In this document: piece by piece, positions 1,244-61,203 of the stretch | Layout of the letters: each line of letters opens with the position of its first letter | How positions within the stretch are numbered: the stretch's first letter is position 1 | NCBI RefSeq assembly: GCF_040938485.1 | Contig: NW_027271714.1 | Coordinates: 124,001-188,000 of the forward strand | DNA: 64,000 nt | Direction of reading: 5' to 3' | Source of the DNA: Diadema antillarum | Taxonomy: Eukaryota | Program-made: the position numbers and the translations under genes | Notes under the pieces: model-generated | The model's database searches: none | What the model saw: only the letters and a program-made list of their open reading frames with translations | Told to the model about the DNA's origin: nothing

Positions 1244-4200
1244 CTTTCTTGCGGAGGAATGCCTGCTTCTGAACCAAGGGGCTGGACCGGACTTGAGGGT
1301 TCAGGAGAAATTTTATCGCTGTCTCAATCTTTAAAGAAAACATATTATATGCACACATTATATCTTTTTTAGAAAGAGAGATATACATATCAACAATATC
1401 TTAAAAAGTCATTGTGAACCAAATTTACAAGATACAGTCGCAAATTACTGAACTGATTTAAAAAACAATTAACTTTCAAGAAAAATAGAAAGGCTTAGGA
1501 GTTACGTCATGCAGAGAAAAACAAAGCTCTGGTTCAAGTTGTTGTTGTTGTTTTTCCTCATTGTTAATCTGTGGCATGCTTGTGACTACTGTTCATTGCT
1601 TTCCATTGTAACAAAGGAAAGACACAAAGCTGAATGAAAGACAAAACAGTTGCAATACAATGAACAAGCAAAACTTAATATCGACATCATGTACAGAAAA
1701 TTCACACCAAGCACACTGAACATGCACAATAAAAATACACAAGGCTGTCTTCATTTTGTGCAACACAAATAATCCTATCTTTGCTCTTTGGTCACCGACA
1801 CTAATACATGTACAGGTTACTTGTGCATCACAAATATAAAAACCACCAACTTGTAGTCTAGAATATAAAACCTAAATGATGCTGAACAGCTTATCATCAG
1901 TTTATAATAGTATTCATAATCTCATAAAAACTTTATGGTGTATTAACAATGTACATTGTAATATTGCACATTGTAGTGTTGTGACATGACTATGTCTGAA
2001 AACACTATACAGAAAAGATTCAGACAATCAACAGGATTACTGATGATACGCATGTATATGATTTTTTTTTTCATTACCATTTTCTCTCGTGGTACTTCTG
2101 TGACTGTCTCAACTGTCTCCACACCGCCAGCAGCCCCATCAGCTACTGCAGCAGCAGTGGTCCCAACAGCTGCGGTGTCAGCTGCACCCTACAAGAAAAT
2201 GTGGAGTTAGGTTTTATTGTTTCAATCAACAAGTCACCGCAATGGCTTGTATATAATGTGAAGGCGTCTCAATGAATGTGCTTGTGTTTAGAGACCCTAC
2301 AATCATAACAATCATAGCACTTACTGCAATGTTTTATTTTAACCTGTTGAGGACGGGCTGATTTTGCTACAACATGCATTTCCTATACACACTTGCCTGA
2401 GTATACTCGGGACTCATCCTCAACGGATTAAAAGAATAATTTTTTTCATCTTTAATTCCATTGAGTTATATCTTGGCAGTTTGTATTTCTTTTTTTATTT
2501 TATTTTTGTCAGTGTTACATTTGTAGTTTAGAGGAGAGGTAATCACGGAAAAACAAAGTCCACTATGTTTCTAACGTACTTTTAAAGCTCTACCACAGGG
2601 TTGGCTGAACAACGCCAAGTCTGCAGCTGCAAAACCCAGAAGTGAATGACTGGTCAGAAAAAAGAAAAATATGTAGAAATGAAATTAAATTATTTTGTTG
2701 TTGAGGGCACACACTACTCTTTCCGAATTCCTGAAGCAAAGACATGTTGGTGTTTCCAAGTCAGGGCTTTCGCAAGGGCATTGCATAGTATCGACCTCAA
2801 ACTGCGGCCTGTGTATCGGCCGCAAAGCTCTGTAATTTAAGTATTGTTTAAACCAAGGGCAAGGTCCCAATGTTAAGTATTTAGCCTGAAATGATATATT
2901 ATCTTCTAAGAATCTAGAAAGTATGGTGGGGCACACACACCTCACCAGGGGCCCTACAAGGTTAAATCCACCATCCTACATACAATGGCTACAAAGCGCA
3001 ATGATCAAATACAAGGGGGACTACGTACAGTACGCTTGGAACTTTGCAGGGTTACTACAACCAGCCACGTAAACTGAGACAAAAACAGGCCAGTATTTGA
3101 TGCATCATGCGTTACCCCAGCCAGGGTGCATAACCTCGGGGTACGTTGTGTAGCGCCACCTCACGTCCACTTGAGGACAGCCGCAGAGAAATGCAGGCAC
3201 TGTATGTGCCCAGGTACATAGCCATTGCCATGCCACTGCATGTTATACTATGCATGCATGGTTCGCTGTGCTAGCAATAGTGTGTGCTTCAGTGCAGTGC
3301 AGTGCGGTGCAGCGTGCGCTAGCTCCAGCTAGCTAAAAAACATGACTTATAGAATTTTTTACAAGAACATGGGGCAAACTGAATGTTGAAAAAAATCACA
3401 CCAAAATAATTTTCCACTTTTTGGCAACCTAGGGTACAACATTATATAAAAAAAATAATAATTTAACAAATGGCTGATTTTTATTTGGTACCCCAGAGTA
3501 CCATTTACCAGGTATGTCATCATTTCCTGACATCTTAAATTTGTATACAGAATACGTGTTATTGATCACGGTCCCCCAAACATGTCTTTTACGTGCTTTG
3601 CCTGTGGAGGCGCAGCTGGCGAGGCGCTGACCATTTTTTTTTAATGCACAACTAGACTCTCAGGCCTGAATTCACAAAGATGGTTTAAATTTATGGCACA
3701 ACATTAGACCATAGTCTAAAACAAGCGTGAAATACTTGTAGGCATACATTGTACCTTTGACATGTGTGTATCAATGCTCGTTTGCCACTGGACGTCTATT
3801 GAGTATTGGCATATGCAGTCTGTCAAACATATTTGATGCAGAAGATATTTCATATACAGTATGCATAAAAACCATGGTTTCACTTTAAAGGGACTGTACA
3901 GTACTGGTTGAGGTGAGGATTCAACTTGTTTAATGTTTTGCCAGATATTTAGAAACCACTCTATGAAATGTTAAGAAGCATACAATTCTAAGGGGAATCA
4001 AAAGTTTATTTGATTAAAATCGGTTTTGAAATGACCGAGATCTCTAAAAACAAGGAAAAACAAAGAAATCCTAATAAAAGCTGTGGCTTGTCAATTTCAT
4101 TTGGATCGCTTTTTTCGATATCTCAGCCATTTGAAGGCCATTTTTTTTTATCAAATAAATGTTGAGTCCTTCTTGAAATTACAAGCTCTTTCATATTTCA

Positions 4201-5821
4201 TAAATTATAAGAGGTTTCTCATTTTCTCAAAACCTGAATCCTCACCTCAACCAGTACCGTACAGTCCCTTTAAACCACCTTCATGAATTTCAGGCCTTTG
4301 AGTTCTAAATACAACTGTAAATGACATCATTCTCGTTTCACAACGATAGCTGTAGCCCTTCAAAGTGGGGAACCACAACACAACTACAAAACTTATGAAA
4401 ATTTAAACATTTCTTATAAAAAATGTATACGTTACTCACGTTACGTGCATGCTTGTATTACAGAAGGTTCATACAATGTAAGTCCATAGAGAGCCCTCAC
4501 AATAAGTCCATTGAACAAAAAAATGGCACTTTCTAGCGCAGTAGAACAGCGCAGGAGTCCCCGACCGTCGAGGTTCATCGTTGCAGAATTCAAAATGGCG
4601 AGTTGACTACTCAGCAAATTATGCGTGTGTGCGTGCGTGGCTGGAAGTGCAGCGATCTATTGCGTACGTGCGCTCTTTGGTAGCAGCACGCACGGTCGAC
4701 AGCAAGACCTTTAAAAGTGCATTCAGATTGAGTGAACTGCCAATTATCAGATGTAACGTTCGCACATGCTGCATATAATCATCATTTTCGGTAAGTTGTA
4801 AAATGTGCATTTCAATATTGGTAGCATAGATATGAAGTCTCATTAATGAAGATTTACATTAGATGAGTTTGAGGTGACAAAAAATTATCTAAAGTATCAA
4901 AATTCAAAGCGATCGCAATGCGATCTCTCTTCGTGTCGTGGGTCATGACGGTACAGCCCTGTCGCTACTTTAGCGACTGGGCTGTGTATAGTTAATACAA
5001 TAGCTATGAAATTCGGCATCGATTACTGAACTTTTCATTCCATTGGGAACTTCTAGACACTACTTTGAGCATTTTTCCTTGCGGTGTGTGAGCAGAAGAA
5101 TTTCATAGAATTTCAGTGATGTTGTGTGTAAAAATTAAATCTAGAAGCCTAACTGTTGTTAGACCCTAATAAGTATAACTCTGAAAAAAAACCTTAACTA
5201 ACATTAGTACTACAATAGAAGATTTGTCTATAACTGTTAGAATCTCAGACTCAGTACTGTATGGGCCATGCCATGGTGGTCATGATGGAGATATGCAGCC
5301 AGTGGCAGTGTGCAGCATGCAGGACACTCAACCGTCTGTAGACATGGTAGACTACTGTCTACCTCAAGCCTCCTGCTATTAAAAATATAACCCCTCCTTT
5401 GGCTTGTTTACGCAATGATCGGCCATGCAAATCTAGAATAAGGCAATGACCAAGCCCTAATAAGCAAGGCTAAGGCAATGAAAATCAACACTACGGACAG
5501 TAGAAGCTTGTTAGCTACACAATGGACCACGGAACGAGATTCACATTCTGTGCTGCATGCTGCATCACAAGGTGACTCATGAACAGACACCGCCGGAGTA
5601 GCTGGCGTGGGGAAAACGATAAATCGCTAGCTGGACGGCTGCACCAGCAGCTGCTCAGCTGGCGCGGGAGTCCTCGCCACCCAAGCAACAACATGCACAC
5701 GGTGCCATTTTCTGGCTGATCATGATGGATGCTATCCGCTATCCGCTTACTTATATCACCACACATGTATTATTTTCTGGAAATGATGGCTATTTACCTC
5801 TCCTTGCGATTCCGCAGACAT
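1244..5821 (-). CDS. PEX14: Peroxisomal membrane protein PEX14, 5' coding exons 1-3 (gene continues past window start)
   Basis: Exons 5821-5798 (MSAESQGE, donor gtaaat), 2188-2078 (GAADTAAVG...EVPREKM, donor gtaatg) and 1328-1244 (IETAIKFLLNPQVRSSPLVQKQAFLRKKG, 85 nt, donor gtgaga). The joined sequence PREKMIETAIKFLLNPQVRSSPL...FLRKKG matches the Pex14 N-terminal domain (human, from memory: [23 protein letters not shown]...FLKKKG). Exon 1 assignment is less certain than exons 2-3. Confidence 0.9.
2343..2427. mobile_element. About 85-bp piggyBac-like MITE (TTAA|CC...GG|TTAA); copies at 26494-26578, 27647-27730 and 39131-39215
   Basis: Four dispersed copies with TIR cc(t/c)gttgaggacg / cgtcctcaacgg and a central gagtatactc palindrome. 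Confidence 0.75.
3889..4269. mobile_element. TTAA-flanked 381-bp MITE (Kolobok-like), 35-bp TIRs
   Basis: agggactgtacagtactggttgaggtgaggattca / tgaatcctcacctcaaccagtaccgtacagtccct. The interior is shared with copies at 40514, 43437, 46857 and 60034. Confidence 0.85.
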
Positions 5822-8800
5822 TTTCCTTGATGTCTCCACTTCGTGTACAACACAGCTGTAAGCAAAGAGAAGTGACGCTTAGCGCTTTGGCTGAAAGAAC
5901 CAAAGGGTACAACATAGCAAGACGTGTGCTTTGGCAATACAGAATCAGAGTACAGCAGCATGCAACTGCTTTGCACACAATTCGCTTACATAACACATAG
6001 CTGGCGCTATTTAGAATTCTCAAATGGACTAAATCGTAAAAATGTTACCAACTGGGCTCGAATCCCGCCCCCCCCCCCCCAAAAAAAAAAAAATAAATAA
6101 ATAAAAAATCAATTACCGGTACAATCGGACTTTCAGCAACGATAATTTCAAAGATAGTCAATCAATCAAAATGCAATTTCATCAGGGTATGAAACTGTGA
6201 ACGATTAACTACATCTTATAGAAATCCCCATCCGATTTGCTTCAGTGGTAATTGGGGATTTTTGTAGAGCATGTCAGGAACAACTACCCTCCAAGTTTTG
6301 TGCATTTTTATCAAACGTCACAAATACTCAGTTGTTCATAATTCGCACAAAAATCTCTCTAAATTGAAAAAGTGACTGCTTGTTTCCTTTCATTTTACTA
6401 ACTTTTTCACGTAACGAAATGATTCGTTACTTCAAAAAGGAAGCATTTTGTTATTATCATTTTGCAAGCGTTGGTTAAATATGAAAAGTCGTAATAATTA
6501 ATAATTAAGAAAAGATAGCAAATTATTGGATTGAACTCTTCCTATATCATTTGGGACTTTGGGCTTTTGTTTTCTTTTTGTTTGTTTTGTTTTCTTCAAG
6601 ATAATCATGAACAATGATTATGATATTTACATATCTATAACTTTAATTACCAATCAACAGGCACAGAATTTTAATTCATTGGTCTGTTGTCCTGTCAGTT
6701 GTGAGCAAAAATATTTTCATTAAAGGATGCCAAGAGTATGTCCGAAGCGGTTTGGAAGAAACGGACCCATGACATGCTATATAGCACTTCACATTTCTCT
6801 GTTCGTTTTTGCAAGATGTAGGGAGGAAGTTATACGTGTAGTTTCATACCCTGAAATGGCATTCAGATTGTTTAATCATTTTTTAAAGTTATCAATGCGG
6901 AAATCCGATCGTACCATTTTCTTGGGGGGTGGGGGTGGGGGAGAACATACTGTACAATAACTGATAATCTGAGTCTCACTAACTCGTATTGAGACTTAAA
7001 TTATATAATACACATTTTGTATAGTGAGAATTTACATACATGTAGTGCCTTCTTTAAAGTGGGCAAAGTAATGGAAAATAACACTATAGCCCACTGAGTG
7101 AATTTGATGACTTAGTGTCTGTTGGGTACAACATGAATTGCGTCCTGTTTTCTGGTTTCATTTTTCATTGTTTTGTCCTTTGTCCGCCAAAATGCCGATA
7201 CATCACAACATACTTTCTACGCCTGTTGGTGTGGTCCTCTGTTGACACTTGAGCTGTGCTCTTTTCGCAGTGTATCATTAACTCTTTGTGGTATATTAGA
7301 ATAGTACTTGATCATAACGGTCTTCTAATTAATATTACAATCTATTTTATTACACCCATTGCTTCTCTTCTTTTTTTTTCTTTGCTTATGTAGGGAAGTG
7401 GGCTTCTACGAAAATAATGCAACCAACGATTCAACACCAGACCTATTACGATAAGTTGCTATATCGATTATCCTAATAAGAAGAAAGTCAACTTCATGTA
7501 TAGTGCCCTTCTTAGTTGTAATATGTAAAATGGCCTGTGTGTGATTCATGCCTAAAAGCTGATGAAGTTCATTTTGTATATATGTTTGCTATTTTCATTG
7601 TTATTACCGAAGACAAAATATTATTTGAAATAAAGAATTGACTGTGCATATAATGTTGTCTTGTTTGTTCCATCTGAGATGATGGCTGGATAGCTCATAT
7701 TATTGAGCTGCACTTACTAGCTAGTCTTGCATAGGGTCCATTCTGGATGTGGAATATAAAATGACCACTTCACCTGTCCGGTTTATGCACTCTGCTCTTT
7801 GCGAGGAATGATTGGGGCGGGATCTTTTTCCGTGCGTGGGTTGTGACTCTCTCCATTTTTATGTCCCATCCGAGGGACAGAATGTTTTAACTTTTAATAT
7901 GAGGGGACGGAATGATTTATACACACTATACAATGAGGCCATTCGAAACCGAAGGTAGACGTGCTACTGAACGACTAAACCAAATCACAAAGGTAGCAAT
8001 TTTACTCTTAAATGATTTTGCTTAGCATTGTCTCATATCTAAGCCAATTTTTATTTTGTTTTTGTTTTTTTATATAGTGTCTATCTTATGATCTCCCCAT
8101 GGGTTTGCTTTTACCTTTTTAACCATAATGATAAAAGTCTGTAGGCCCTATTAACTTGTATATATAGGCGACATGCAGGCTCATTATTATAATGAAAATC
8201 TATGAGAGATTGTTTTACAGCCAAAGAGAAACATTCAATTCAATTCATTTCAATTCAGTTCAAATGAAATCTAATTTCCAAAAACACATTTTGTTGTCGA
8301 TACAAATTCAAGGAGAACAAAAACGTGCAATGTATTACAACTATAACGCATATCATACTATGAAACTTATTGTTCAAAATAATTGTGCATTGGAAAAGAG
8401 AGGCCCACGTAAAAGAAAAGCTTTTAGAAACGTTGGCCACTCAATAACTTACAATGTACAATATGACAATATATTTACAAAATATCATATGATTGAAATA
8501 AACCATTTCACAAGAGGCAAAGAAGATGAATGCATTGTATTGTTGCAAATGATAGAGTCGAAAATCGTTGCCAACAGATATGATTCGCAATGATTTCTGC
8601 ATCTTATTTCTTCACACAAACATGAAAAAGCATTCATTTTTCATACATAACAAGAAAAAAGGGAAGTTAGAGGTGAAGAGTTTGAATATATACAAAAACA
8701 GATAAACGCCATTTCAAAGTTTTTTAAAGTAAGGTCATCATCAAAATAGAGAAGAATAAAATCATTCCAATGATACTGCACATGTTTAATGACGAGAAAT

Positions 8801-9876
8801 ACGACTTAGTTTAATATACGTATATCATTACTATTATCACATACGTTAAGATAAATTATTTTCTTTTTTATTAGCAGCCGTAAATCTAAAAATATCTCAC
8901 ATTACAATTGGATGTAAAGGTCCGGGTTTGTTTGTTTTTTAAGATTTAGACTCTTCAATAAGACGCACTTGCATTTTTATTATTTTCATAATCATCTTAT
9001 ATACAAGCCTTGAAGGAAAGATATAGCAGGATTGATTATACATATTGCAAAGACAAACGAGGGAGACAGACAGAAAGACAGACAGGGAGAAAAATAGATA
9101 CTGTTCGTATACCTTGTCCATTATATAAGTGTAAAATGATATTATCCTTCATCCATCTCTCCCTCCCTCCATCTTTCTTCCCATTCCTTTTCATTTTTTT
9201 TCTCTCTCTCGCCTGTTTTTGGTGATCCATGCTTATGTTAATTGATAACGATAATCATAATAACAATGATGAGGAAAATGACAACTTTAACGATTATCGT
9301 CGTCATCATCATCACCATCATCCTCATCATCATCATCATCATCGTGGCAACAAAGTAACAGCAATGGCTATGGTCTTTGTATGACTAAGGTCGACCTCGT
9401 CAAGGAATGAAAAGTTAGAAAGGCGCGATACAACAATAGAGAAAGAGAAGAAATACACATAAAGAGAAAAAGTACGCATAGATAAAGAAGAAGAAAATGA
9501 AGAAGAAGATGAAGTATAAGAACCAAACAGAGAAATACTGGTAATTTCCAGGGGAATGCAACAACGTCATTGTGTCTTTTATTCAGTGATAGACAACAGT
9601 CGGGAGTTGAAGAACCATAATAATCGTGATATGAACCAGATTTTTATTAATCCCTGAGGCTTATTCCGAGAGCGTGTGTGCCATTATGGCCGTTGGACGC
9701 ACGATTCGCGCATTTGCCCTCGACGTTTTCATCGGGTCTACGCAAACAAAAAACAAAAATAAGGAAAGGATCGTGATGATTTCGTCCGATTCCTGACCTG
9801 TTCAGCCAAACATTTATTTAGATTTGCTTCACTGTTGTTGTAAACGCCAAAAAGGACTCTTTTTTTTTTGTTCAAG

Positions 9877-10240
9877 TGACGCAAACACGATATATGACGT
9901 AAACCGTTTGAATGATTTGAAACTATCACTGATTTCCTTTTTTTAAATGTTTTAGAGGAGAGATCGTTTCGGTTATTAAATATGCGATTTTACCACCGAA
10001 ATAGCGTTTCCAATGACACATACAATGCAGGTTTTCTATTATGCTTGCGTTCATAAAGCGAGATATTTCTGATAATATATCTGCGGTGATAAAAAGGGAT
10101 GTCTTATTCCTAACACGCCCATACGCCTTAATTATGAATAACGGCTCCTCCGAATTTTACAGGCAGCAAAAAACAATAATTTTGTTGAATAAAACCAAGT
10201 AGAAAACTATAACAGGGAAAAGATTTCGAGAAGATATAAG
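9877..10240 (+). promoter_or_regulatory. Candidate neuropeptide promoter: CRE-like TGACGCAA (9877) and TGACGTAA (9895), TATA-like TATAAG (10235)
   Basis: Motif matches upstream of exon 1. The TSS is not determinable from sequence. Confidence 0.4.
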
Positions 10241-10493
10241 GCACACATGCACACAATGAAGCATTCATCTCCGAAGATCTTGTTCACTTCGCTTTGTTAC
10301 CAGAAAGTGCCCGCTTGGTGTTGCAAGTCTATCGCTCCAAATTTACAGTCAAGAAACATAATCCTAACAATATTGACATACCTCAGACCTGTCGAACTTG
10401 CCTTTCCTCGTAAGGGCTTCACATTCAGGGACGCTTCTATCTACACCCATCCTTTCGAGTTTCGCCCGTTGAATATTCCTGACTCCTGTCACC

Positions 10494-10619
10494 ATGACAA
10501 CAACGTACCTGTTTGCTCTGGTGTTTATCTCCTGCCTGTGCTCAATGGCGATGCCCTCCCGAGGTCTTCCCTACGACATGTTTCCCGAGGCTTCCGAAGA
10601 AGTCAACCTCCAAGATCAG
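10494..10619 (+). CDS. Neuropeptide precursor exon 1 (signal peptide + start of propeptide)
   Basis: ATG at 10494 in accATGa context, hydrophobic core YLFALVFISCLCSMA, donor cag|gtacgt at 10620. Confidence 0.85.
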
Positions 10620-13600
10620 GTACGTAAAGACCTTTATAAACTCGTCAAATCCAAGACAGCACATCTCTGTGGTTTAATAATTTGGTGCTGTATTTGTCTT
10701 CTTTCAACAAAAAAAAAAATTGTCGAGAAAGAATAAACCTTCTTTTTTTTTCCATTTGAGGCCTCTTTTGGTCACAAGCCATTCTTTAGTATTTTATTGC
10801 TTCATTTTAATAAAAAATAAACCTTCTCCTTCATTTTCTCTGTATGCCACTGTTTATTTGGTTGCTGCGTTATAGCAAAGGCTACTGTCTTATATCGCGA
10901 AATTAGATAATGATAATAATAATGATCCCAAAATGTTGCAACATATCTTTGGAAGATTAAAGATAATCTTTCTCTCTCAAATTGTAAGTTGTTGTTTTGT
11001 TTGTTTGTTTTGTATTTCAATACAGAATACACAGTAAAACGTATATAGAGTGGCTAATTTAGTGAGGATGCGACAATAATTTCTGCAGTAAAGTTAACCC
11101 AGGGCCTGATTAGTTAACCATGTCTATAGACTTTAACTGATAAAGTGAATGGCAGACATTCGGGCTTATATTCTGAAAATGCTTTCCATTTTACACAATA
11201 TTATCGCTCTTTTATTTGGAAAAAAAAAAGATAGTCATGTTAGACCAGCTCATTATATTTATGATCCTCCTGGAATACTCCTTCTGATAGCGATTGTCAT
11301 TGTTTCTTCATTATGTCAGACATAATATTATTACCGATGTCTTTGCTGCATTACGGCATGATAAGAAAAAAAATAGATGCCATGAGAAAAAAAAATAAAA
11401 ATACACGGTACATTAATTCTCGTGTTTTATTTCATGTTTATAAAAATTGATGTTCACATGTTAAAAATGTAGCTTTTATGAGTGTCTCAAAGTATGAATT
11501 ACCTGCTCCACAACTTGTAATATGCCATTTATCTATATTCTTTGTTAATGTAATGTTTATCTACTCTCTTCTTAATAAGTAAGGGTACCATTCACTTAAT
11601 TTCAATCGTTGTCTTCTGTGATGGAAATATTATTTCTTTCCTCACACAAATTGAAAGTGGATTTTTGTCCTATAAAGCTGTAGGAGTTTTTACCTTTTTC
11701 AATGTTTTGTATAGCTTAGTTTTGTTTTCTGACCTTATTACCTGTCTTCTGAATCTTGTAAACATTCACATTCATATACTAATGAAGTAGAATAATCACC
11801 CACGGGAAACTTACATGGCATCACATATCACGTGACTACAATTAAATCTACATTTCAATGCAGCACACACAATGAAAAGAATGAATATGACGAATAGACG
11901 GAGGAAATCATAAACCTTGACAAAGAAGATACATGTATTACGACTTGCATACACATGACCACACACAATCATGTGAAGGAAGGAAAAACAGTATATGGGA
12001 TAATCAAAACTACAAATTATAAAACATTAATTTTGATCTTTTTTCTTTTCGTTGACGCCTAGAACACGCAAAAGCTGATGTTGATGAAGCTGCTCTCGGG
12101 AAGTAATCTCAGCCTGGAAAGTATCGCATCCAGAGTCTCGAACCTACAACCTGACAAACGAGGATCATCCAGTTGTGAGTATCCACTATGGTATAGCCAC
12201 CCGTATACACGTGATCTTCAACCAAACCAATAACACGAAATGTCAATCGATATATTAAAAGTCCGACTGAGGAGGGGGGGGGGGGGGAGGGCGCTCAGGC
12301 CAGGAATTCCGCAAAGGGAGGCACATCACCTATTTTTTCTTTTGATTTATTTTGTCTTAACAAAAAAATAAAAAGGGGCGTGCGCCTGGTGCGCCCCCCT
12401 CTGGATCCGCCACTGTGGCCCCACTTTTTTTGGATGACTTTATTATAGGAATACATAGGATCTAATTACTTGCCCCATCCCCCCCCCCCGTTTTTTTCCC
12501 CAAAAGTGGCACCAGAAAGAAAGAAAGAAGAAAAAAAAACCGTGGTTAAGCTTTATTTGTGGTGTACCAAAGTTGCACTGAGGACCCTTTTTTCCCCTGC
12601 TTGTTAGCTGATGAAACCCGGAAGTGGCACCAGAAATACAATGCATAGAATGGGCCCCACTTTTCAAAAACGTGGGTGCCGGCCATGTTACATCATGACA
12701 CAGTGTCATGCTAATTGAAGGGGTGGTATTCGTCACTATGAGTAAAACTGCACAAATAAAGCAAAATAAGTATTTTTGAATAACCCGGGGTTCTGCTTTG
12801 CCCATGAGCAGAAAAGAAACTGGTAATTTGTACCAACAGCTAGGTGTGTTGGATTTTATTTGCAGAGAAAAACATGAGATGATTATTCAAGGGATCCTTA
12901 CAAATAGTGCTTGCTGGCACATCCGCCTGACAACGAAAGTGGAACAATGACAATATCAATAGAAAACACCCCAACAAAATTAGGCCCTAATGCTAATGCA
13001 TTCCACGTCAAATTATAAAATAGAGGCTTTCCAAATTGTTAAGTGACGGTCCATTCTGGTGACCTGTAGTCTACGCAAGTTCATCCTTTGTTTAAACGTG
13101 ATTGATGAATTCAAAAAATTGTTATGCCGGGCAAGCTTATGCTTTACGGCGCTTTCAAAACGAGTTAAGTGCCTAGCCAAATGAGAGAGAGAGAGAGAGA
13201 GAGAAAAAAAAAAAGAAGGTCATTATGATGATATAATTATTGTTGTCAACATTTTCTTTGCTACCCCAAAATTTCTGCAATGAAAATACCGCTACAGTGG
13301 GGAAAATTACCACGTTAATAAACGATTAAATGAATCCAAAGCCGTAAAGTGAAAGTATTCCGTTTCCTTGTATGATCCATTAAGTATAAGTTTATACTTC
13401 ATGAGTCTTTTACCAGTTTTAATGTAATGTACAGTATGCCCAATGATCGCGAAAACCATCCAAAGTTTTCATATCGTAAATAAAAGAGCATAATATAAAT
13501 TCTACAATATTGTATGTAGCGTATAATAATCATTGGAGGTTGCTACTCTAGTTAGATGGATTCTGCTTGCATGTTTATTCTCATATCTTCTCAAACGATA

Positions 13601-13747
13601 ATCGACGTGAACCTCCATAAATTTCTTGTATATAAACAGGTATCATATATCACATTAATAACCTCTCCCTCTCTTTCTATCTCACTCCCTCTTTCCGGTC
13701 ACATGATTACAGCTAGCGGCTGTCGCTTTTGGAAGATTCTTTGTTGA
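10494..13747 (+). CDS. Somatostatin/urotensin-II/allatostatin-C family neuropeptide precursor (90 aa, 3 coding exons)
   Basis: Exons 10494-10619 (phase 0), 12063-12174 (phase 1) and 13713-13747 splice in frame to MTTTYLFALVFISCLCSMAMPSRGLPYDMFPEASEEVNLQDQ-NTQKLMLMKLLSGSNLSLESIASRVSNLQPDKR-GSSSSSGCRFWKILC*. It has a hydrophobic signal peptide, an acidic spacer, a KR convertase site and a C-terminal two-Cys peptide containing FWK. Confidence 0.85.
12063..12174 (+). CDS. Neuropeptide precursor exon 2 (propeptide + KR site)
   Basis: Polypyrimidine tract + ctag| acceptor, open frame ending DKRGSSS, donor |gtgagt at 12175. Confidence 0.85.
13713..13747 (+). CDS. Neuropeptide precursor exon 3 (cyclic core SSGCRFWKILC*)
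   Basis: First AG after a long CT-rich tract (13662-13697) is at 13711-12. The phase-1 join gives S-S-G-C-R-F-W-K-I-L-C-TGA. Confidence 0.8.
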
Positions 13748-13983
13748 TGAGACGACCAATAGACCAAGGCACCTGTTACCACGACAACGCCGTAATCCTC
13801 TTTGACTCACGGAATATCTCTTCTTTAGCGATTCAAATCTTAGTATCACCACATCAAATTCCATTCGAAGGAAATCATCTAAGCTCTTTAGCTGGAACAT
13901 GGCGTAATCACGTACGGTCCATACTTCAACTAAGTACTAGTATTACTTTACCCCATGCCTACGTGACTTCCAAGGGTGTTATA

Positions 13984-14174
13984 CAGTGGACTCCCGTTAT
14001 AACGAAATCCTCGCGGGACTGGCAGATTTCTTTCGTTTTATCGAAATTTCGTTACAACCGAACAAATAAACAATAAGAATGCATCGACCGGATAATGTTG
14101 AGGTCTGAATGTTTACTTCGTTGTAACCGGAATTTCGTTAACTACAGCGTGCTCATTGAAACGGGAGTGCACTG
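13984..14174. mobile_element. Tc1/mariner-type MITE (TA TSD) downstream of the neuropeptide stop codon
   Basis: ta|cagtggactcccgtt ... aacgggagtgcactg|ta. Confidence 0.8.
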
Positions 14175-32571: not shown

Positions 32572-32906
32572 ATGTATTCCATCTCATCCTCATTACTCCT
32601 CTGCTGCTCCGTACTGCTACTATGTCTCGCTTCAATTCATTGCGCACCAACGAGACCGAACATCGTCTTCATCCTGGCAGACGATTATGGTTACCATGAC
32701 ATCGGTTACCATGGCTCAGAGATCAAAACTCCCAATCTGGATAAGCTGGCTGCTGAGGGTGTAAAACTTGAGAACTACTATGTGCAGCCAATTTGCACAC
32801 CAACAAGGAGCCAGTTGATGAGTGGGAAATACCAGGTTTGGGAAAGCCTCATTATCAGTAAAGAAACAAATATGATAACAAAATGTTTAAAAAGCACACA
32901 TACACC

Positions 32907-32939
<33 letters not shown>

Positions 32940-35900
32940 CTAACCTTACTTGTTTCCTTGTGAAATGTCCTCAGTTTAGCTGATGACACATATTGAGGTT
33001 AGTTATTACCACTACCATTTTATTGTGATCCACAGTGCATGCACATTGACTCAATCATGCCATTCTATAACTGGATACTAGATTTGTTCTACATTATTGA
33101 AGAGAAATGCATTGCAAGTTTGAATTCTCTTGATAAACAGGTAAATTAGCCAAAAGTTTAGAAAGGAGATTGGCAACTAATAAGGAAAGAAACAGCCATA
33201 AATTAACATGTAGAATCTCAATTGCAGACTTGTGGCCCAAGTCCCACCTAAAGGAAGATGTGCAAATCCTAAGTAAAGATATGTTTCTTGCTTTCTTTGT
33301 TCTTTTTTTTTATCAGCGAACATATCTTTTGTGTTTCTTAACATGAAATGCCCATAAGAAAGAGTTAGTTGTCTGAGAGTTGTAAAATACTTGTTTGTGC
33401 CATAGATTTTTCAAGTAAATCTGTCTTACAATTGATTTCAACTCAATAAAAAAAGGCTTGTATGGATTAGCTATAATGAGTATGATGTGAATTTGAACTT
33501 TATACTATGATAGATTAATTCTGTCTTGTTTTGCTATTTTGTTTTTACTGATTTCAAATTCAGATTCACACAGGGTTACAGCATAGCATCATATGGTCAC
33601 CCCAGCCAAGCTGCCTTCCTGTGGAGGACCCCACCCTAGCTGACCAGCTCCTGAAGGTAGGGTACGCTACACACATCGTGGGCAAGTGGCATCTTGGCTT
33701 CTACAAGAAGGCCTGCTGGCCCACCAGGAGGGGCTTCCAAACATTCTTTGGTGAGACAAACATCCCCTTGGGTTTCAGGGTTCAAACCCCAAAATATGGC
33801 ACTAGTGTCCCTGAGTAAATTGCTTTTTAACCATTGCCTCCGAATTTCAGTAATTTCCATAGATTCAATGTTTGGCACTTAACTCTGTTGGCATTAGCAA
33901 TGAGTTCATATTATACACAACACTTTAATAAAATTTTGTTGGATATCGGGATTACTTGCCCCCTAAAAACACTCCTATCTTTCTTTAGACTAAGGACTTT
34001 CTGTCTTCCCAGTATGTGAATTTGCCAATCTACATTGCACGTGAGGTTAACCCCAAAAGAGAAATATCACCAAATGGATAGTTATTTGATTTAGTTGTTG
34101 TATTTAGGACTGCTACTAGGATCCATGCTGGCTTTGGGGACACAATAAGAATCCATGAAAATGAAGAAAATTCAAACCTCAAGAATCCATCTACAAGGTA
34201 TTTTTAATAGCGAGGCCACCAAACTGTGCTCTGTCGTAGATCCTGTCTACCAGTAATTCCTAAACTGATCAATGAGCTCAAACACCAGACATGCTCTTTG
34301 TTCACATCCAGGCTACCTCACAGGTTCAGAAGATTACTACAAACACACTCACCCATCCAACGGCTGGAATGGTAAGGACCTCCGAGATGGCGAGACGGAA
34401 GTGGAAGATGAATACAAGGGAAAATATTCTACTCACATCTTTGCCAAGAGAGCGGAGGAAATTATCCACAACCATGATGCTACTCAGGTATACATAAAAG
34501 ATTTAAGCTTACCTTCTGAGTCACTTTCCCCTCTTCTCTTTTGTTTTATTTTATAGCCATTTGGCACTTAGATATCTGCAACTTTCAACCCAGCTTTTCA
34601 ATGTTTGCTTATCATGGGGGTTTGCTTCCCAGTCACTTGCATGTTTCTCTGTTGGTAATCTCATAAATTTAATTGTTGGCGTTGCCTCTCGAACTCATGT
34701 AGGTATGCATTGCATGATCTTGATCAGACTTAACTTAATTTCATTACATGCACAACAAATCCATGATCAATGCAAGTGGTTTTATTGAATTAAGTTGCTT
34801 TTTTTTAATCATGCAATAATATGTAGGCCTATTGCTTCTTATAAGGGCCAAATATTGTTAATGACAGAGCATTGCTTGTTTGACAAAGTAAAAAAAAAAG
34901 ATATCATGTCTGTTGTGTGACATCGATTCCCCATGACCAATTTCAGAGTTATGTTGCACAATTGTAAATGTGCACAAAGCAAATGATATTCAGAGGGCCC
35001 AATGTACATGAATGTGTGACAGACAGTTTAGATCAAAATGAATGACATTTACAACAGGAAATACAAAATTTACAGAAACAGATGTGCACTCCTCCAACCA
35101 CTTGATGGTTAGGTGTGAGTTGCTGCAGAAATGTTATTCTTGTTCTTAGCCAATACTTTATTTTTTTATTTACGTGAGTATTTGTTTTCTTTTCCCTCCA
35201 GCCATTGTTTTTGTACATCCCTTTTCAAGCTGTCCATAGCCCACTCCAAGTCCCTGTCTCGTACACAGAGCAGTACAGCTTCATTCAGAACAAGGCAAGA
35301 CGGCAGTACGCTGGAATGGTGTCCTGCATGGATGAAGCTGTGGGAAATATCACACAAGCCTTGAAAAAGACTAAACTGTGGGATGATACAGTCCTCATAT
35401 TTTCCACAGGTATACCAAATATCAGGCCTTGTCTTTTTTTATGGAGGGAGGGGGATTGTGAATGGAGTGGAAGAACTGTTTCCTTTCAGTTATTCAGTTG
35501 AGGAATCACATCATAGGTCATATATATAAGTTCATTTTCAGTTCATTTCAGTTCAAGCCATTTTGGATAAAGCATCTTAAAAAGCTTCCACAATTGCGCA
35601 CTTTACGGTTAGACAAAGGTATGAAATATGAACATATTGAAGAATAATGAAGCCAAGATATGCTTGAAAGGTGCAAGATTGAGCAGGAATTTACATTTTG
35701 AACATCATTTGCTGTGACAGTAATATGTGGGGGGGTCATCCAACGAGACCCATACCCACAAGTCATATGACCCATGATTTTGACACTTAAAAAAAAGGTC
35801 CATGAGTCATACAGCCCATGAGTTGGACACGAGGCAAATAAGGCCCGTGGGTCGACACTGGGTAAAAACAGCCCAAGAGTTCGAAATGTGTCAGTCTCTT

Positions 35901-38900
35901 GGGCCTTATTTGCGTAGTGTCAATTTCATGGGCTGTATGATTCGTTGGTGTCGGTCTCGTCTAGGCTGATTAGTAATACAAAGTGATCCTTTTTTTTTTA
36001 ATTTGAGTTTTTGATGATCTGCTCTTAGAAATTTCTCTGCTTTCATGAAATGTGATATACATGTAATTATGAGCATTAGGAATTGGCCTATTGTTTTACA
36101 TGCCTACTGTCTTACACACATGGATGCATCTGAATTTCAGAACCGATACTAGTATATTTTTTCAACTACATTGTATGTTTGTCATATGACTGACTGCTTT
36201 AAAATTTCTTTGTTTTCTAGGCTTTGGAAATAGAGTATGTCAAATCATATACAGAAAAGCCTACCATTTCTATGCAAGGTTATTGGAAATAGAACCTTAA
36301 GAATTATGGAATTTTAAAAAGCTTACCATACCTGTTCAGGGATATTGGAAGTAATTTAAGAAAACAAATACGTTATTGGAAAGTCTACTATTCTGTTCAA
36401 GATAATTGTAAATAATAAAATCAAAAAATATATAATATATTATTAGAAAGCCTTTCATTTCTGTGCAAGGTTATTGGGAGTAAAAATGAAAAATTATATA
36501 TTATTGGAAAGTATTCTGTAGAGGAGTATTGCACTTATTATTGGAGAGCTTAGAGGCACTATTTACCAGTTGAAGATGAAACAAGTATAGTCGCCTATGT
36601 CTTAATCTCTATTTCCATGTCTTGATCTCTGTAGTCACCTGTCTTAATCTCTATTTCCATGTCTTCTCCCATTGCATCTCAACCAAGATAATGGAGGACA
36701 AATTCTTTCAGGAGGAAACAACTGGCCCCTTCGGGGTTGGAAGAAATCCCTGTGGGAAGGGGGTGTACATGGGGTGGGGTTCGTCGCCAGCCCCCTCCTG
36801 GACCCATCAGTGAGAGGTACAGTCAGCAAGGAGCTAATCCATGTCAGTGATTGGTATCCCACACTGGTGCAGGGCGTGGCAGGGGGTACAGTCAACAGCT
36901 CCGCCCTAGATGGATACAACGTCTGGAATGCGATCAGGTTGGTATTTCCTGTGTGACAGATTTGAGAAGCAAACTGCCAATATTGTTCCATTCATTACTA
37001 ATCTCTGCCATTCTTTTACTCATACTCATTGTGAAAAAACAAATTATGAAAATGGATGTCCAGGTGTAACCATGGAGTTGATGACTGGTGTAGGATTTGT
37101 GTTTTGTGTCATAAGATGAGTCTAATGCAGATGTTACATTGGGTAAGACATTGTAGCTGCTGTACTTTATACACCAGCCATAACACCATCATGTTTGTGT
37201 CATGTGAGTCTAATGCAGATGTTTTCTTTGGTTTAGAAGTTGTACTACTTAACACCATAACACCTTTGTGTTTCATGTCATATGAGTCTATTTAAATGCA
37301 GATGTTTACATTGGGTAAGAAGTTGCAACTACATAAAATCATAGCACCATAAATTTCCAGTCCATTTCCAAATGACCATGCTATAAAATTAGATGTAAAT
37401 AATGCTCCGTTTCATAGTTTATTTGAAGAATATGTTGTACGACCAACTCAAAGAAAATATCATGTGACCATGCATCACAAAACGAACAAAAAGTCGCACC
37501 CCCTGATTTTACATGAGGACTCAAAAATGGTGAAACTCGTCAACCAAGTCAGTTTTGAGTTTTTCATATTTTCTGAAAGAGCTATTCTTCTTTTACACTA
37601 TTCCTAAGTATGGGATCATAAAATGAATGGGAAAGTGTGTTTTCAGCAGTTTTTCTACAACCTCTTTGTGTAAGATGGTGAGATCAGGTATGTCTTAGAG
37701 GCCCCTTTATATTTCTTAAAAATCCTTTGCACATTCTTCACTTTCAACTCTAATATTTTTTGAAAGAATAATGCTACTGCTTTGAAAGTTGGCAGTAATC
37801 ATGGACAGAATGTGTTAATAGAGCATACTTAATTTCAGCTTAATCCAATAATCCCTTTATTGTTGTTGCTCCAGTGGTTTACATCCTGTTTTTTGTCCCA
37901 TTCATCGCACAGCTAGCACGGTTTGGTGAAGCCTAAGCACTTGAATAGACCATGTACTTCAGAGCCTCTTTTCTCAGTTCACACTTTTCCAGAGTGCATG
38001 CTTTTTTTCCAATATTTAGATAGCTTAGGAGTTGAATGAGAGTCCATATGAATTGAGTTATACAAAATTTTAAAGCTTACAGTCTGTTCTTTCAGAATCT
38101 GCCCTTAACTAAAAATCCATGTCGGGAGACTTTTTGTTGGTTTTGTGATGCAGGGTCACATATACAGGTGAAAGCGATATTTTAATTTAAGACCAACATT
38201 TCATGGCTGTCCATATCTTTTCTTGAATATATCTACACCTATTCTCATTACAAATTACCAAAGCATTGAATTACTATCAACTTGAGTTGATATATTCCAA
38301 GAAAGATGAAAACGACAACAATTGACTACAGAGTACTCTTTATCAAATATCAACAAAGCATGAGCAAGTTATCAACTCGGAAGTTTTTTCCTGCATTTGA
38401 TTTTGTTTTTATTTGTAATTTTTAGCAAAGATTTATTATGTTTCACATTTATAAAACAAGTGTCGTGGATAGGTGGTACGTTAGGGGGCTGTGATGATGT
38501 GGTGATAGACCCCAGGACTCAAATGAATGAGTGGACGCAGGATTGTAGTTCACTTGACTTTATTGGTGTCAGTAAATCGACACACAAAAAAGAAAACCCT
38601 GCAAGAAACAGGAAACAATCATAAGTTTGTATTCAACATCTCATTTCTTAATAAATTGATCCCCCCTCTTTTTGCAATGCAAGAGCACTTCCCAAAATGT
38701 GAAAACTATATGTATATATGGTGCTAAATCTACAAATGTAATTACTTTCTATGCAGATCAAGATATAAGCTATGATGCAATACACAATAAATTGTCTTCA
38801 ACACTCGTGGACTCACTATCCACACAATTACGGGTGTATCTCGAATATCCAAACTTCCCAGGATATCCACAAAACTCTATAACTCGTTCATCGCCCAATA

Positions 38901-43436: not shown

Positions 43437-43791
43437 AGGAACGGTATAGTATTGGTGGAGATGAGGATTGGGCTTTTAATTTTTTGTGAGATACCAAGAA
43501 ACCACTTATGAAATTATACAGAGCATACCATTCTAAGAGGAATTCAAAGTTTGTCAGATGAGAATCTGCTTTGGAATGGGTGAGACATCCAAAAACAAAG
43601 TAAAATTAAGAAGAATTAGAATTGCTCTGTTTTGGATATTTCAGCCTTTTCAAAACCAATTTTCATCAGATAAATGTAGAATCCCTCTTGGAATTACATG
43701 CTCTTTCATATTTCATAAGAGTTTTCTCATTAACTCACAAAAAAATGTTAGAAACCTGAAGTTATGTCTCTACCAAAAGTGTACGATCCCT
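43437..43791. mobile_element. Kolobok-like MITE family copy
   Basis: Same termini and interior as 40514-40894, TTAA on both sides. Confidence 0.8.
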
Positions 43792-45548
43792 TTAAGGGCA
43801 GCGCAGTTGATATTTTGTTCAGAATGTATTGGTGTGTAAATTGGCCCGCACGGAATCTAACTTCTATGCTATGAACCTTAGAGCAAACTCCTTGTGTCCC
43901 AGCATGGAGGTGATATCCTACAGGGCAACTTATATCAACGATGCCGCAAAAAGCATTTCATATCTTGGCCCTGTTTCCTAAAGCTGTTCACAAAGTTACG
44001 CATGACCTTGCGAACGACTGGACTATGAAGTGCCAGTGTGTGTGCCCATTTTTTTTTCCTTACATTTTAACAAAGTACAACTGTATGTCACTCACCTCCA
44101 TTGGGACAAAACTACACTTTCAACTAAAAATGTGTGTTAAAATGTAGGAATAATCATTATCATCTGCAAATTTCAACTTTAGCTATTGAAATAGACAATG
44201 ATTAGGAAACCCACTCGGCTTGCCATATGTAAGTCATTTGTAAAGTCATGCGCAACTTTACAACAGCTTTATGAAACAGGACCCTGTATACACTGTACAT
44301 GTATTATGTCATTTCCAGTGGTATGCAGGATCTCTGTTTTTTCCTTGACCAAACTTTGACAATCTGATGTAGTCATACTAACTATGTCATAGCAGACAAT
44401 GTTTCTCTTATACCTCGCTACATACTCAGCAATTTTCACTTGATGGGAAGTTCATGTATAAGTTTTATTTTGATGAATACAGAAATAAAGCAAGACAAAG
44501 GTAAATTCATGACGATCAGAGAAAACATGAGAATTTTATATCATTTTGAATTTTTACAATGTTTTTTTTCTTGCAGTAAACTAGTAGTCACAGTTGCATA
44601 TAAAGAGTGTGATCACAAGGCAAGTTAATGAAATGTTTGTGATTAAAGCTGCTAAACAGGAAAAAAAATCATATGAAAATATGGAATATTTCATGCTCTA
44701 ACTTCAACACTATTTCTATTTATGTTACAAATAAGCTATCACTATGATTTTATTTTGCTCTATTTGCATAATGATGAACTTCAAAATGTTCCAAAATTGG
44801 CATTGAACTGTTCTTTTTTTATTGTAATAAAACTCTGGATCATTATGCAGATCTGATGAGCGGAAGAAATCGTGCTGTCACAAATCTCCCAAGTTCTTTC
44901 AGTTTCACGCAAGTTTCATAAACTTTACTACCTGACATGGAATCAAGAAAACAGAACTACATCAGTCTTTCCCATCGATCTAAATCTAAGGTTGTGGCAA
45001 TTCAATGTGATAATTTTGTGTAGGGAGGGGGTTTAAATTTGTGAATCATAAAGATTTCATGATTTATGCCAATCAAGTGGAGAGTTGTGACATGATTTTC
45101 TATTGCCCTGTCCAATTTGTAGATTAATTATTAATTATGCAGCCACACTTTAACTTATGATTGGTTGTGGAAAATTTTGTTTCAGTAGACTTACGAATTC
45201 TATGACTTTGCTTGATATCCGATTGTGAAGAAAATAGAACTGTTGTTTTTTTCTATTGTTCTCATCAAAGTTAAATGACACACTTCAATGCAGTTCCCGC
45301 TGTATAGAGAGACTATTTCACCGTTAAAGTACAGTACTAGATGTACATTTGATTCTAAAATCTTCTAACATCAAGGCTGAAGTTTCACCATTTTCTTTTT
45401 TTTTTTCTTAAACAGCAGAACCATACATGTACCAAGAAGACTGTTTTGAACAGTGTGTGTATGTGTGAAATGTCTTTATATTGGGAGAAAATAAAGAAAT
45501 CCAGATGGATATTTTTATTATATAGTAAATTAAAATGATGTGTCTTTT

Positions 45549-47250: not shown

Positions 47251-47329
47251 AACAATATTTTTCCTTTGCAATATATGTCAGTTACTATATTCCTTGTCGT
47301 TTCATGCCTTAATCCCTCGAAGAAAGAGT

Positions 47330-52000: not shown

Positions 52001-61203
<9,203 letters not shown>

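What the first reader, a model, noticed from the sequence alone, without database searches (positions are those of the whole stretch)
1244..13747. The FWK-peptide gene sits head-to-head with PEX14, echoing the vertebrate CORT-DFFA-PEX14 block
Seen: the PEX14 start codon (5821, minus) is about 4.7 kb from the peptide ATG (10494, plus), with no recognisable gene between them. Established: human cortistatin (the SS2-type somatostatin paralog) lies at 1p36.22 in the order KIF1B-PGD-CENPS-CORT-DFFA-PEX14-CASZ1, and UTS2 is on the same chromosome arm. Inference: a somatostatin-family/PEX14 linkage may predate the chordate-ambulacrarian split. That would be independent, sequence-free evidence that this gene is the ortholog of the SST/CORT(/UII) locus and would help resolve SS-versus-ASTC orthology.
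Basis: partly seen in the sequence, partly recalled or inferred. Interest (0 to 1): 0.86.

Follow-up and report, generated by a model that had tools for sequence, protein, structure and literature searches.

The report
Sea-urchin FWK peptide gene beside PEX14
A probable but unannotated cyclic-peptide hormone gene does sit head-to-head with PEX14 in this Diadema sea-urchin DNA, but eight other deuterostome genomes show that this tight pairing arose late and locally, so it is not an inherited copy of the human cortistatin-DFFA-PEX14 block.

Summary
The PEX14 start codon is at 5821 (minus) and the peptide-gene ATG is at 10494 (plus), 4,673 bp apart, with no recognisable gene between them. The window comes from Diadema: 70 of 73 PEX14 N-terminal residues match D. 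antillarum.

PEX14's head-to-head partner is DFFA in amphioxus and in two hemichordates, as in human. It is TMEM222 in a crinoid, a starfish and a brittle star. No FWK- or somatostatin-like exon lies within 10 kb upstream of PEX14 in any of these, nor in a sea cucumber or in S. purpuratus.

A published gene table (Zhang 2022, Dataset S1) places the canonical somatostatin genes next to LIG3. They lie about 1.35 Mb from PEX14 on the same chromosome in both starfish and amphioxus. A loose somatostatin-PEX14 linkage is therefore ancient, but it can already be read from published data. The Diadema adjacency is a later rearrangement inside that block.

The FWK gene looks real. It has a signal peptide, a KR cleavage site, canonical splice sites, matching intron phases and a polyA signal. 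No transcript or protein supports it. Its six-residue ring and phase 0 plus phase 1 introns do not match somatostatin-2-type genes. This scan also noted the gene on the same stretch as s1-208670.

The parts
5798..5821 (-). PEX14 exon 1 (ATG at 5821; MSAESQGE; phase 0 donor)
   Evidence: sequence. Identical to the N-terminus of D. antillarum PEX14 P0035. No mismatches to D. antillarum DNA.
2078..2188 (-).
   Evidence: acceptor ttgtag, donor gtaatg. Spliced translation matches P0035 apart from 3 residues.
1244..1328 (-). PEX14 exon 3, core of the Pex14 N-terminal domain (IETAIKFLLNPQVRSSPLVQKQAFLRKK)
   Evidence: Pfam Pex14_N E=1.8e-9. phmmer hits are PEX14 proteins.
5822..10493 (.). Spacer between the two start codons (4,672 bp) with no recognisable gene
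   Evidence: ORFs without Pfam hits. No Rfam family. No tRNA. 96.5% identical to D. antillarum, with many indels.
10494..10619 (+). FWK-peptide gene exon 1: signal peptide and N-terminal pro-region, phase 0 donor
   Evidence: Five differences from D. antillarum, four of them at third codon positions.
12063..12174 (+). FWK-peptide gene exon 2: pro-region, KR cleavage site, start of the peptide; phase 1 donor
   Evidence: 112 of 112 nt identical to D. antillarum.
13713..13747 (+). FWK-peptide gene exon 3: ...SSGCRFWKILC plus stop
   Evidence: Identical in D. antillarum L002.
14065..14070 (+). AATAAA polyadenylation signal, 318 nt after the stop codon
17899..29692 (-). Right-hand neighbour: class-V aminotransferase gene that looks like selenocysteine lyase. 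It is tail-to-tail with the FWK gene and carries a LINE reverse-transcriptase insertion in an intron.
   Evidence: Exon-like ORFs. Pfam Aminotran_5. Naming it SCLY is inference from the sequence.
32572..41816 (+). Arylsulfatase B-like gene; belongs to the same chromosome block in starfish and scallop
   Evidence: Pfam Sulfatase. ARSB-like on A. rubens chr18 and P. maximus chr16.

Best explanation
The window is Diadema sea-urchin DNA from the chromosome block that corresponds to human 1p36 and 3q27-29. It holds the 5' end of PEX14 and, 4.7 kb away on the other strand, a probably genuine but unannotated three-exon gene. That gene encodes a 90-aa secreted precursor. Cleavage at KR would release GSSSSSGCRFWKILC, presumably closed by a disulphide into a six-residue ring around FWK.

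The adjacency is a derived arrangement of the sea-urchin lineage (shown only for Diadema), made by rearrangement within the chromosome. It is not a relic of a deuterostome SS-DFFA-PEX14 cluster. The ancestral head-to-head partner of PEX14 was DFFA. In the echinoderm stem it became TMEM222.

The canonical somatostatin-type gene sits next to LIG3, about 1.35 Mb from PEX14, in both starfish and amphioxus. The FWK gene is most simply read as an extra, lineage-restricted member or derivative of the somatostatin/allatostatin-C family that arose or landed inside this block.

Shown here: gene anatomy, PEX14 identity, neighbours in nine other genomes, and distances from the published table. Inferred: expression, processing, disulphide, family membership and the duplication origin.
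For: Gene anatomy and PEX14 identity.

DFFA (CIDE-N plus DFF-C) is head-to-head with PEX14 in B. floridae (CASZ1 downstream), Ptychodera and Saccoglossus, as in human (PMC554762).

TMEM222/RTE1 is head-to-head with PEX14 in A. rubens, Anneissia and Amphiura, with gaps of only about 0.2-0.3 kb.

No cyclic WK exon and no tblastn match to the precursor in any upstream flank, including S. purpuratus, whose flank has no gaps. No DFFA or TMEM222 exons in the 64-kb window.

Zhang 2022 Dataset S1: ArSS2 at 8,907,785-8,939,261 beside LIG3, and PEX14 at 7,548,481-7,554,489, both on chr18. Bf SS-like gene at 6,034,599-6,049,961 beside LIG3, and PEX14 at 4,666,923-4,675,215, both on chr14. Orthologs of 1p36 and 3q27-29 genes fill the intervals.

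The window's other genes (SCLY-like, ARSB-like) map to the same starfish chromosome.

Weak signs of coding constraint: 4 of 5 exon-1 differences from D. antillarum are synonymous third-position changes, and exons 2+3 show 0 of 147 differences against 77 of 2,956 in the introns.
Against: Flanks were limited to 10 kb. An FWK-like gene 10-100 kb from PEX14 in S. purpuratus or other species would have been missed, and no whole-genome search was possible.

No protein in the 5.8-billion-sequence collection shares words with exon 1 or with the peptide exon. There is therefore no expression evidence and no ortholog outside Diadema.

The only second copy (D. antillarum, 93-97% identical throughout) is too close to prove selection.

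Family assignment rests on a 3-residue motif, precursor layout and intron phases. The duplication origin is not shown.
Confidence: 0.58

Rival explanations
1. One reading: a somatostatin-family gene lay right beside (DFFA-)PEX14 in the deuterostome ancestor. Only vertebrates (CORT) and Diadema (the FWK gene) keep it there.
For: Human CORT-DFFA-PEX14 order. FWK and PEX14 are 4.7 kb apart. Both genes lie in the same ancient block. SCLY, the FWK gene's other neighbour, is head-to-head with PGD in starfish, and PGD flanks CORT in human.
Against: It needs independent loss or relocation in amphioxus, two hemichordates, a crinoid, a starfish, a brittle star, a sea cucumber and S. purpuratus. Crinoid, starfish and brittle star share TMEM222 directly abutting PEX14, so the echinoderm ancestor had no room for it. 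The canonical SS genes are LIG3-linked about 1.35 Mb away. By my own rough estimate, not a computed result, a post-hoc match of one flanking gene to any neighbour of the four human SS/UII-family genes has about a 5-10% chance inside one shared chromosome.
Confidence: 0.06
2. The FWK gene is the Diadema ortholog of the echinoderm SS2-type (true somatostatin-type) gene. It was moved about a megabase to PEX14 by an inversion and then changed heavily.
For: It is on the same chromosome block as SS2 in starfish. It has the FWK motif, as does ArSS2. It has a phase 0 intron in the N-terminal part, as do SS-type genes.
Against: All described echinoderm SS2 peptides have WKG and rings of 10-15 residues. 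Here the motif is WKI and the ring has 6 residues. SS2-type genes have a single phase 0 intron, whereas this gene has an extra phase 1 intron. An unchecked note from this scan (s1-215064) reports another somatostatin-type exon 1 elsewhere in this genome.
Confidence: 0.12
3. There is no gene. Three short open stretches happen to line up, and the adjacency has no meaning.
For: No annotated gene in the D. antillarum assembly at this place. No matching protein or transcript-derived protein in the collection. No TATA box and no full CRE near the ATG. The divergence from D. antillarum is too small for a strong test.
Against: The model has a signal peptide, a KR site directly before a C-terminal Cys-x6-Cys peptide, and compatible intron phases (0, then 1). 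It also has four canonical splice sites with polypyrimidine tracts and AATAAA 318 nt after the stop. The strict peptide pattern occurs 1 time against 0 in 50 shuffles. The substitution pattern is biased to third codon positions, and exons 2-3 are unchanged.
Confidence: 0.15
4. The FWK gene derives from the echinoderm SS1/allatostatin-C-type lineage, and its FWK motif is convergent.
For: Echinoderm SS1-type genes, and only those, combine a phase 0 intron with a phase 1 intron in the C-terminal part, as this gene does. SS1 peptides carry C-x-G-R-F (ArSS1 KCIGRFQPFSMPC, OvSS1 GKCVGRFVPYMMNC), and here the sequence is G-C-R-F.
Against: There is no FxP motif and the ring is much shorter. ArSS1 lies on another chromosome (chr6) in starfish. 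The exact position of the SS1 phase 1 intron could not be compared.
Confidence: 0.1

Closest known systems
Human 1p36.22 block KIF1B-PGD-APITD1(CENPS)-CORT-DFFA-PEX14-CASZ1
   Same: It contains PEX14 and a cyclic FWK peptide gene of somatostatin style within a few kb to tens of kb. It belongs to the same ancient chromosome block.
   Different: In human, DFFA separates CORT from PEX14 and is PEX14's head-to-head partner. In Diadema there is no DFFA, PGD, KIF1B or TMEM222 in 58 kb, and the peptide gene itself is head-to-head with PEX14. Outgroups keep DFFA-PEX14 without any SS gene beside it.
Echinoderm SS2-type / amphioxus SS-type genes (ArSSP2 LOC117302407; Bf LOC118430974)
   Same: Secreted precursor with one C-terminal disulphide peptide after a dibasic site. 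FWK/IWK core. Phase 0 intron in the N-terminal part. Same chromosome as PEX14.
   Different: Those genes lie beside LIG3, about 1.35 Mb from PEX14. Their rings have 10-15 residues, K is followed by G, and they have a single intron. No sequence similarity to the FWK precursor was detected.
Echinoderm SS1 / allatostatin-C-type genes (ArSSP1, Spnp19)
   Same: Two-intron structure (phase 0, then phase 1). An R-F pair inside the ring. C-terminal peptide after KR.
   Different: SS1 peptides have FxP and a 10-residue ring with no WK. ArSSP1 is on a different chromosome in starfish.
[quoted passage not shown]
   Same: Short ring around an aromatic/aliphatic-W-K core. UTS2 shares 1p36 with CORT and PEX14 (established knowledge, not tested here).
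   Different: Their ring has exactly four residues (CFWKYC). UII/URP genes have a phase 1, not phase 0, first intron and more introns.
DFFA-PEX14 bidirectional gene pair
   Same: PEX14 has a divergently transcribed 5' neighbour.
   Different: The pair is conserved in human, amphioxus and two hemichordates. In echinoderms DFFA is replaced by TMEM222, and in Diadema by the FWK gene across a 4.7-kb spacer that is too long to be a shared promoter.

Membership tests
Conserved SS/CORT-DFFA-PEX14 microsyntenic block | The PEX14 ortholog is present | tested here: met
   Pfam Pex14_N. 70 of 73 residues identical to D. antillarum PEX14. PEX14 orthologs across deuterostomes are the best hits.
Conserved SS/CORT-DFFA-PEX14 microsyntenic block | DFFA lies next to PEX14 | tested here: not met
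   No match in the whole window to the translated DFFA regions of amphioxus and Ptychodera.
Conserved SS/CORT-DFFA-PEX14 microsyntenic block | A somatostatin-family gene lies beside PEX14 in other ambulacrarians and in amphioxus | tested here: not met
   The 10-kb upstream flanks of 8 species have other genes or nothing, and no cyclic WK exon. SS genes are about 1.35 Mb away in starfish and amphioxus.
Conserved SS/CORT-DFFA-PEX14 microsyntenic block | Other block members (PGD, KIF1B, CASZ1) lie on the same stretch | tested here: inconclusive
   None was recognised in the 64 kb. CASZ1 would lie beyond the left edge. The rest of the scaffold was not available.
Somatostatin/cortistatin-type (SS2-type) neuropeptide precursor | Signal peptide and a single C-terminal peptide after a basic cleavage site | tested here: met
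   Hydrophobic core at residues 5-17. KR at residues 74-75, followed by a 15-residue C-terminal peptide.
Somatostatin/cortistatin-type (SS2-type) neuropeptide precursor | Two cysteines enclosing an FWK/IWK core | tested here: met
   GCRFWKILC.
Somatostatin/cortistatin-type (SS2-type) neuropeptide precursor | Ring of 10-15 residues, and WKG in echinoderm members | tested here: not met
   The ring has 6 residues and K is followed by I. The criteria come from PMC9048919 and PMC8851493.
Somatostatin/cortistatin-type (SS2-type) neuropeptide precursor | A single phase 0 intron in the N-terminal part | tested here: inconclusive
   The phase 0 intron is present after residue 42, but there is an additional phase 1 intron after residue 79 (criterion).
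Somatostatin/cortistatin-type (SS2-type) neuropeptide precursor | The peptide activates SS-type receptors | not testable with these tools
   This needs a receptor assay.
Echinoderm SS1 / allatostatin-C type | Phase 0 plus phase 1 introns | tested here: met
   against the description in PMC7536072. The exact intron position in SS1 genes was not compared.
Echinoderm SS1 / allatostatin-C type | FxP motif in the ring | tested here: not met
   The ring is RFWKIL. The motif is described.
Urotensin II / URP | CFWKYC ring of four residues and a phase 1 first intron | tested here: not met
   Six-residue ring and a phase 0 first intron.

The most novel reading that the evidence does not exclude
The FWK gene is a surviving copy of an old second somatostatin/urotensin-like paralog that lay in the PGD-PEX14 interval of the deuterostome ancestor. 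On this reading it is the true positional counterpart of vertebrate CORT (or UII). It would have been lost or overlooked as a tiny unannotated gene in other ambulacrarians and in amphioxus. The SS/UII split would then predate chordates.
Probability: 0.06. Interest if true: 0.8.

Novelty: new variant of a known kind. Interest (0 to 1): 0.34.

Why it matters
Whether echinoderm and protostome cyclic peptides are orthologs of somatostatin, of allatostatin-C or of urotensin II is still argued from 2-3-residue motifs, so positional evidence is valuable.

This check shows that the attractive PEX14 adjacency cannot be used that way. The positional ortholog of chordate somatostatin is the LIG3-linked SS2-type gene. 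The tight FWK-PEX14 pairing is recent.

Three things remain of interest. First, Diadema appears to carry an extra, unannotated FWK peptide gene with a ring size between urotensin II and somatostatin. Second, an SS-LIG3 pair is shared by starfish and amphioxus. Third, a DFFA-PEX14 divergent pair is conserved from hemichordates to human. The last two are cleaner synteny anchors for this family than PEX14 adjacency.

Tried and rejected
1. A look-up of the exact Gal3ST ORF product to name the organism returned nothing on record. The organism was identified through PEX14 instead.

2. phmmer with the 38-aa PEX14 exon stretch gave P0007, which comes only from a 1.3-kb transcript contig and was useless for synteny. 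It served as the query for annotated orthologs.

3. Homolog searches used stop-free references covering exon 1 and the peptide exon. No candidate shared three 5-mers.

4. The spliced 90-aa precursor has no reference. I did not type it into any database tool, so no full-length homology search or ESM Atlas search was done.

5. An IWK cyclic ORF in D. antillarum intron 1 (CSLIWKKKYSC) is not conserved in the window and was rejected as chance.

6. The 114-aa unnamed gene head-to-head with sea-cucumber PEX14 is an LRR-like fragment, not a peptide precursor.

7. MCH-type identity was considered and dropped. Echinoderm MCH peptides are 28 residues long, with no FWK described.

8. Literature searches for the peptide sequence and for PEX14 with somatostatin synteny found nothing relevant.

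9. A search of this scan's notes for PEX14 and LIG3 in the genome was not useful.


Full report
**What is in the window.** Base composition (33-43% GC) and split genes show a eukaryotic genome.

PEX14 lies on the minus strand.
- ATG 5821-5819 opens a 24-nt exon (MSAESQGE) that ends at a gtaaat donor.
- A third exon at 1328-1244 encodes IETAIKFLLNPQVRSSPLVQKQAFLRKK. This is the core of the Pex14 N-terminal domain (Pfam PF04695, E=1.8e-9, 37.6 bits against a cut-off of 23.2).

The spliced 73 residues match the annotated Diadema antillarum PEX14 (P0035) at 70 positions. Window 5000-15000 aligns to the D. antillarum contig at 93-97% nucleotide identity. The window is therefore Diadema, either D. 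antillarum or a very close relative. The rest of PEX14 lies beyond the left edge.

**The peptide gene (plus strand).**
- Exon 1 is 10494-10619: 42 codons, a hydrophobic signal-peptide core, donor CAG|GTACGT, phase 0.
- Exon 2 is 12063-12174: acceptor ...CGCCTAG|, ends ...QPDKRGSSS plus one base, donor GTT|GTGAGT, phase 1.
- Exon 3 is 13713-13747: polypyrimidine tract, ACAG|, then ...SSGCRFWKILC and a stop.
- AATAAA follows 318 nt later.

The product has 90 residues. Cleavage at KR would give GSSSSSGCRFWKILC. This agrees with scan note s1-208670, which I re-derived independently.

The start codons are 4,673 bp apart. The spacer contains no ORF with a Pfam hit, no Rfam family and no tRNA.

**Is the peptide gene real?**

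Evidence for:
- The precursor layout is complete, the intron phases are compatible and all four splice sites are canonical.
- The strict pattern (Cys ring with FWK directly before a stop) occurs once in the window and never in 50 shuffles.
- Against D. antillarum, 4 of the 5 exon-1 differences are silent third-position changes.
- Exons 2 and 3 show 0 of 147 differences, against 77 of 2,956 in the introns.

Evidence against:
- D. antillarum has no gene called there.
- No protein in the 5.8-billion-sequence collection shares three 5-mers with exon 1 or with the peptide exon.
- The only second copy is too similar overall to prove selection.

I put the probability of a real gene at about 0.85.

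**Test of the synteny claim.** I collected PEX14 orthologs and fetched each locus with 10 kb on either side. The 5' neighbour of PEX14 in each species is:

| Species | Group | Head-to-head neighbour of PEX14 |
|---|---|---|
| Human | vertebrate | DFFA (literature, PMC554762) |
| Branchiostoma floridae | amphioxus | DFFA (CIDE-N + DFF-C); CASZ1 downstream |
| Ptychodera flava | hemichordate | DFFA |
| Saccoglossus kowalevskii | hemichordate | DFFA |
| Anneissia japonica | crinoid | TMEM222/RTE1 |
| Asterias rubens | starfish | TMEM222/RTE1 |
| Amphiura filiformis | brittle star | TMEM222/RTE1 |
| Apostichopus japonicus | sea cucumber | small LRR-like fragment |
| Strongylocentrotus purpuratus | sea urchin | no called gene (flank has no gaps) |

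- DFFA-PEX14 is therefore the ancestral deuterostome pair.
- In the three TMEM222 species the gap to PEX14 is only about 0.2-0.3 kb. That makes TMEM222-PEX14 the ancestral echinoderm state.
- Six-frame pattern scans and tblastn with the spliced precursor found no FWK/WK cyclic exon in any of these flanks.
- Only D. antillarum has the three exons.
- Conversely, the 64-kb window has no DFFA or TMEM222 exons.

Because a crinoid and two asterozoans share TMEM222 abutting PEX14, the Diadema arrangement must be secondary.

**Where the canonical somatostatin genes are.** Dataset S1 of Zhang et al. 2022 (PMC8851493) lists gene coordinates.

| Species and chromosome | PEX14 | SS gene | LIG3 | SS to PEX14 |
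|---|---|---|---|---|
| A. rubens chr18 (NC_047079.1) | 7,548,481-7,554,489 | SS2 at 8,907,785-8,939,261 | 8,874,617-8,904,509, directly beside SS2 | about 1.35 Mb |
| B. floridae chr14 (NC_049992.1) | 4,666,923-4,675,215 | SS-like at 6,034,599-6,049,961 | 6,103,501-6,116,133, next listed gene | about 1.36 Mb |

The stretches around these genes are full of orthologs of human 1p36 and 3q27-29 genes, in shuffled order. In starfish they include MTHFR, NPHP4, TP63/73, MASP, RTP4, SKI, CAPZB and EIF4G3. In amphioxus they include MFN2, CAMTA1, TARDBP, CASZ1, NPHP4 and MTHFR.

For two random points on those chromosomes, being this close has a probability of about 0.20 in starfish and 0.12 in amphioxus (my calculation). 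A loose SS-PEX14 linkage is thus plausibly ancestral. It is carried by the SS2-type gene and can be read from published data, although the paper does not single out PEX14.

The window's other genes are a selenocysteine-lyase-like class-V aminotransferase at 17.9-29.7 kb and an arylsulfatase B-like gene at 32.6-41.8 kb. Both also map to starfish chr18. The whole window therefore belongs to this block.

**What the FWK gene is.**
- Echinoderm SS2 peptides have WKG and rings of 10-15 residues (ArSS2 RAKNARCMADFWKGRGLVDC, OvSS2 RRPGCVYDIWKGRGLSRCT). Their genes have a single phase 0 intron.
- SS1/ASTC-type genes have phase 0 plus phase 1 introns and C-x-G-R-F-x-P peptides.
[quoted passage not shown] UII/URP genes start with a phase 1 intron.

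The Diadema gene has FWK, a six-residue ring, and phase 0 then phase 1 introns. It fits none of these cleanly. Its intron pattern is that of the SS/ASTC family and closest to SS1, while its motif is that of SS2 and chordate somatostatin.

An unchecked scan note (s1-215064) reports another somatostatin-type first exon elsewhere in this genome. That argues the FWK gene is an additional gene. No paper in the library contains the peptide.

**Verdict.** The adjacency is real but derived.

By my rough estimate, the resemblance to CORT-DFFA-PEX14 has a post-hoc chance of about 5-10%. This assumes one shared chromosome of several hundred genes, with the neighbours of four human family members as possible targets.

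The best reading (0.58) is a lineage-restricted SS/ASTC-family gene that arose or landed next to PEX14 inside the conserved 1p36-like block. The alternatives are:
- relocated SS2 ortholog (0.12);
- SS1-derived gene (0.10);
- no gene at all (0.15);
- ancient adjacency (0.06).

**Limits.**
- No whole-genome search of any eukaryote was possible.
- Flanks stopped at 10 kb.
- The spliced precursor has no reference, so I left out full-length database searches with it.
- The positions of SS1, SS2, PGD, KIF1B and CASZ1 in Diadema remain unknown.

Noticed in passing
Published table read (A. rubens NC_047079.1 at 8.87-8.94 Mb; B. floridae NC_049992.1 at 6.03-6.12 Mb): The canonical somatostatin-type gene is the immediate or next-listed neighbour of DNA ligase 3 in both starfish and amphioxus. 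This SS-LIG3 pair is a cleaner positional argument for SS2/SS orthology than PEX14. In the parts of the paper that I read, I did not see it pointed out.
   Followed up: partly
L005, L008, L010; L003, L002, L007, L008, L010 downstream flanks: DFFA and PEX14 form a divergent pair from hemichordates and amphioxus to human. A gene of about 413 aa of the LRR_TMOD-LMOD type lies tail-to-tail downstream of PEX14 in both hemichordates, the crinoid and both sea urchins.
   Followed up: partly
The distance from PEX14 to the somatostatin gene is almost the same in starfish (1.353 Mb) and amphioxus (1.359 Mb), although the genes in between are shuffled. This is probably coincidence and remains unexplained.
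   Followed up: no
window 17899-29692 (-); The selenocysteine-lyase-like gene next to the FWK gene is head-to-head with PGD in starfish (chr18, 4.11 Mb). PGD flanks CORT in human, but PGD is not in this window.
   Followed up: partly
window 22984-24084 (-) and 61953-62951 (-): Two LINE-type reverse-transcriptase ORFs (Pfam RVT_1). The first lies inside an intron of the SCLY-like gene.
   Followed up: partly
window 4010-4165 (+), 40473-40802 (-), 43558-43839 (+), 46950-47312 (+): Four copies of a short interspersed repeat whose ORF reads ...[12 protein letters not shown].... One copy lies in PEX14 intron 1.
   Followed up: no
window 51832, 54216, 55025: Three full CRE palindromes (TGACGTCA), all inside the carboxylesterase-family gene region. 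There is none near the FWK gene.
   Followed up: no
window 47330-48490 (-) and 51971-56491 (+): A single-exon galactose-3-O-sulfotransferase (Pfam E=1.6e-55) and a carboxylesterase-family gene. Similarly named genes lie on amphioxus chr14, in the same 2-5 Mb region as PEX14.
   Followed up: partly
window 27365-27534: An assembly gap or masked run of 170 N inside the SCLY-like gene. It was left as it is.
   Followed up: no
L002 about 4117 (-), D. antillarum intron 1 of the FWK gene: An ORF end reading HCSLIWKKKYSC plus a stop. It looks like a somatostatin-style ring but is absent from the window's copy, so I judged it chance.
   Followed up: yes
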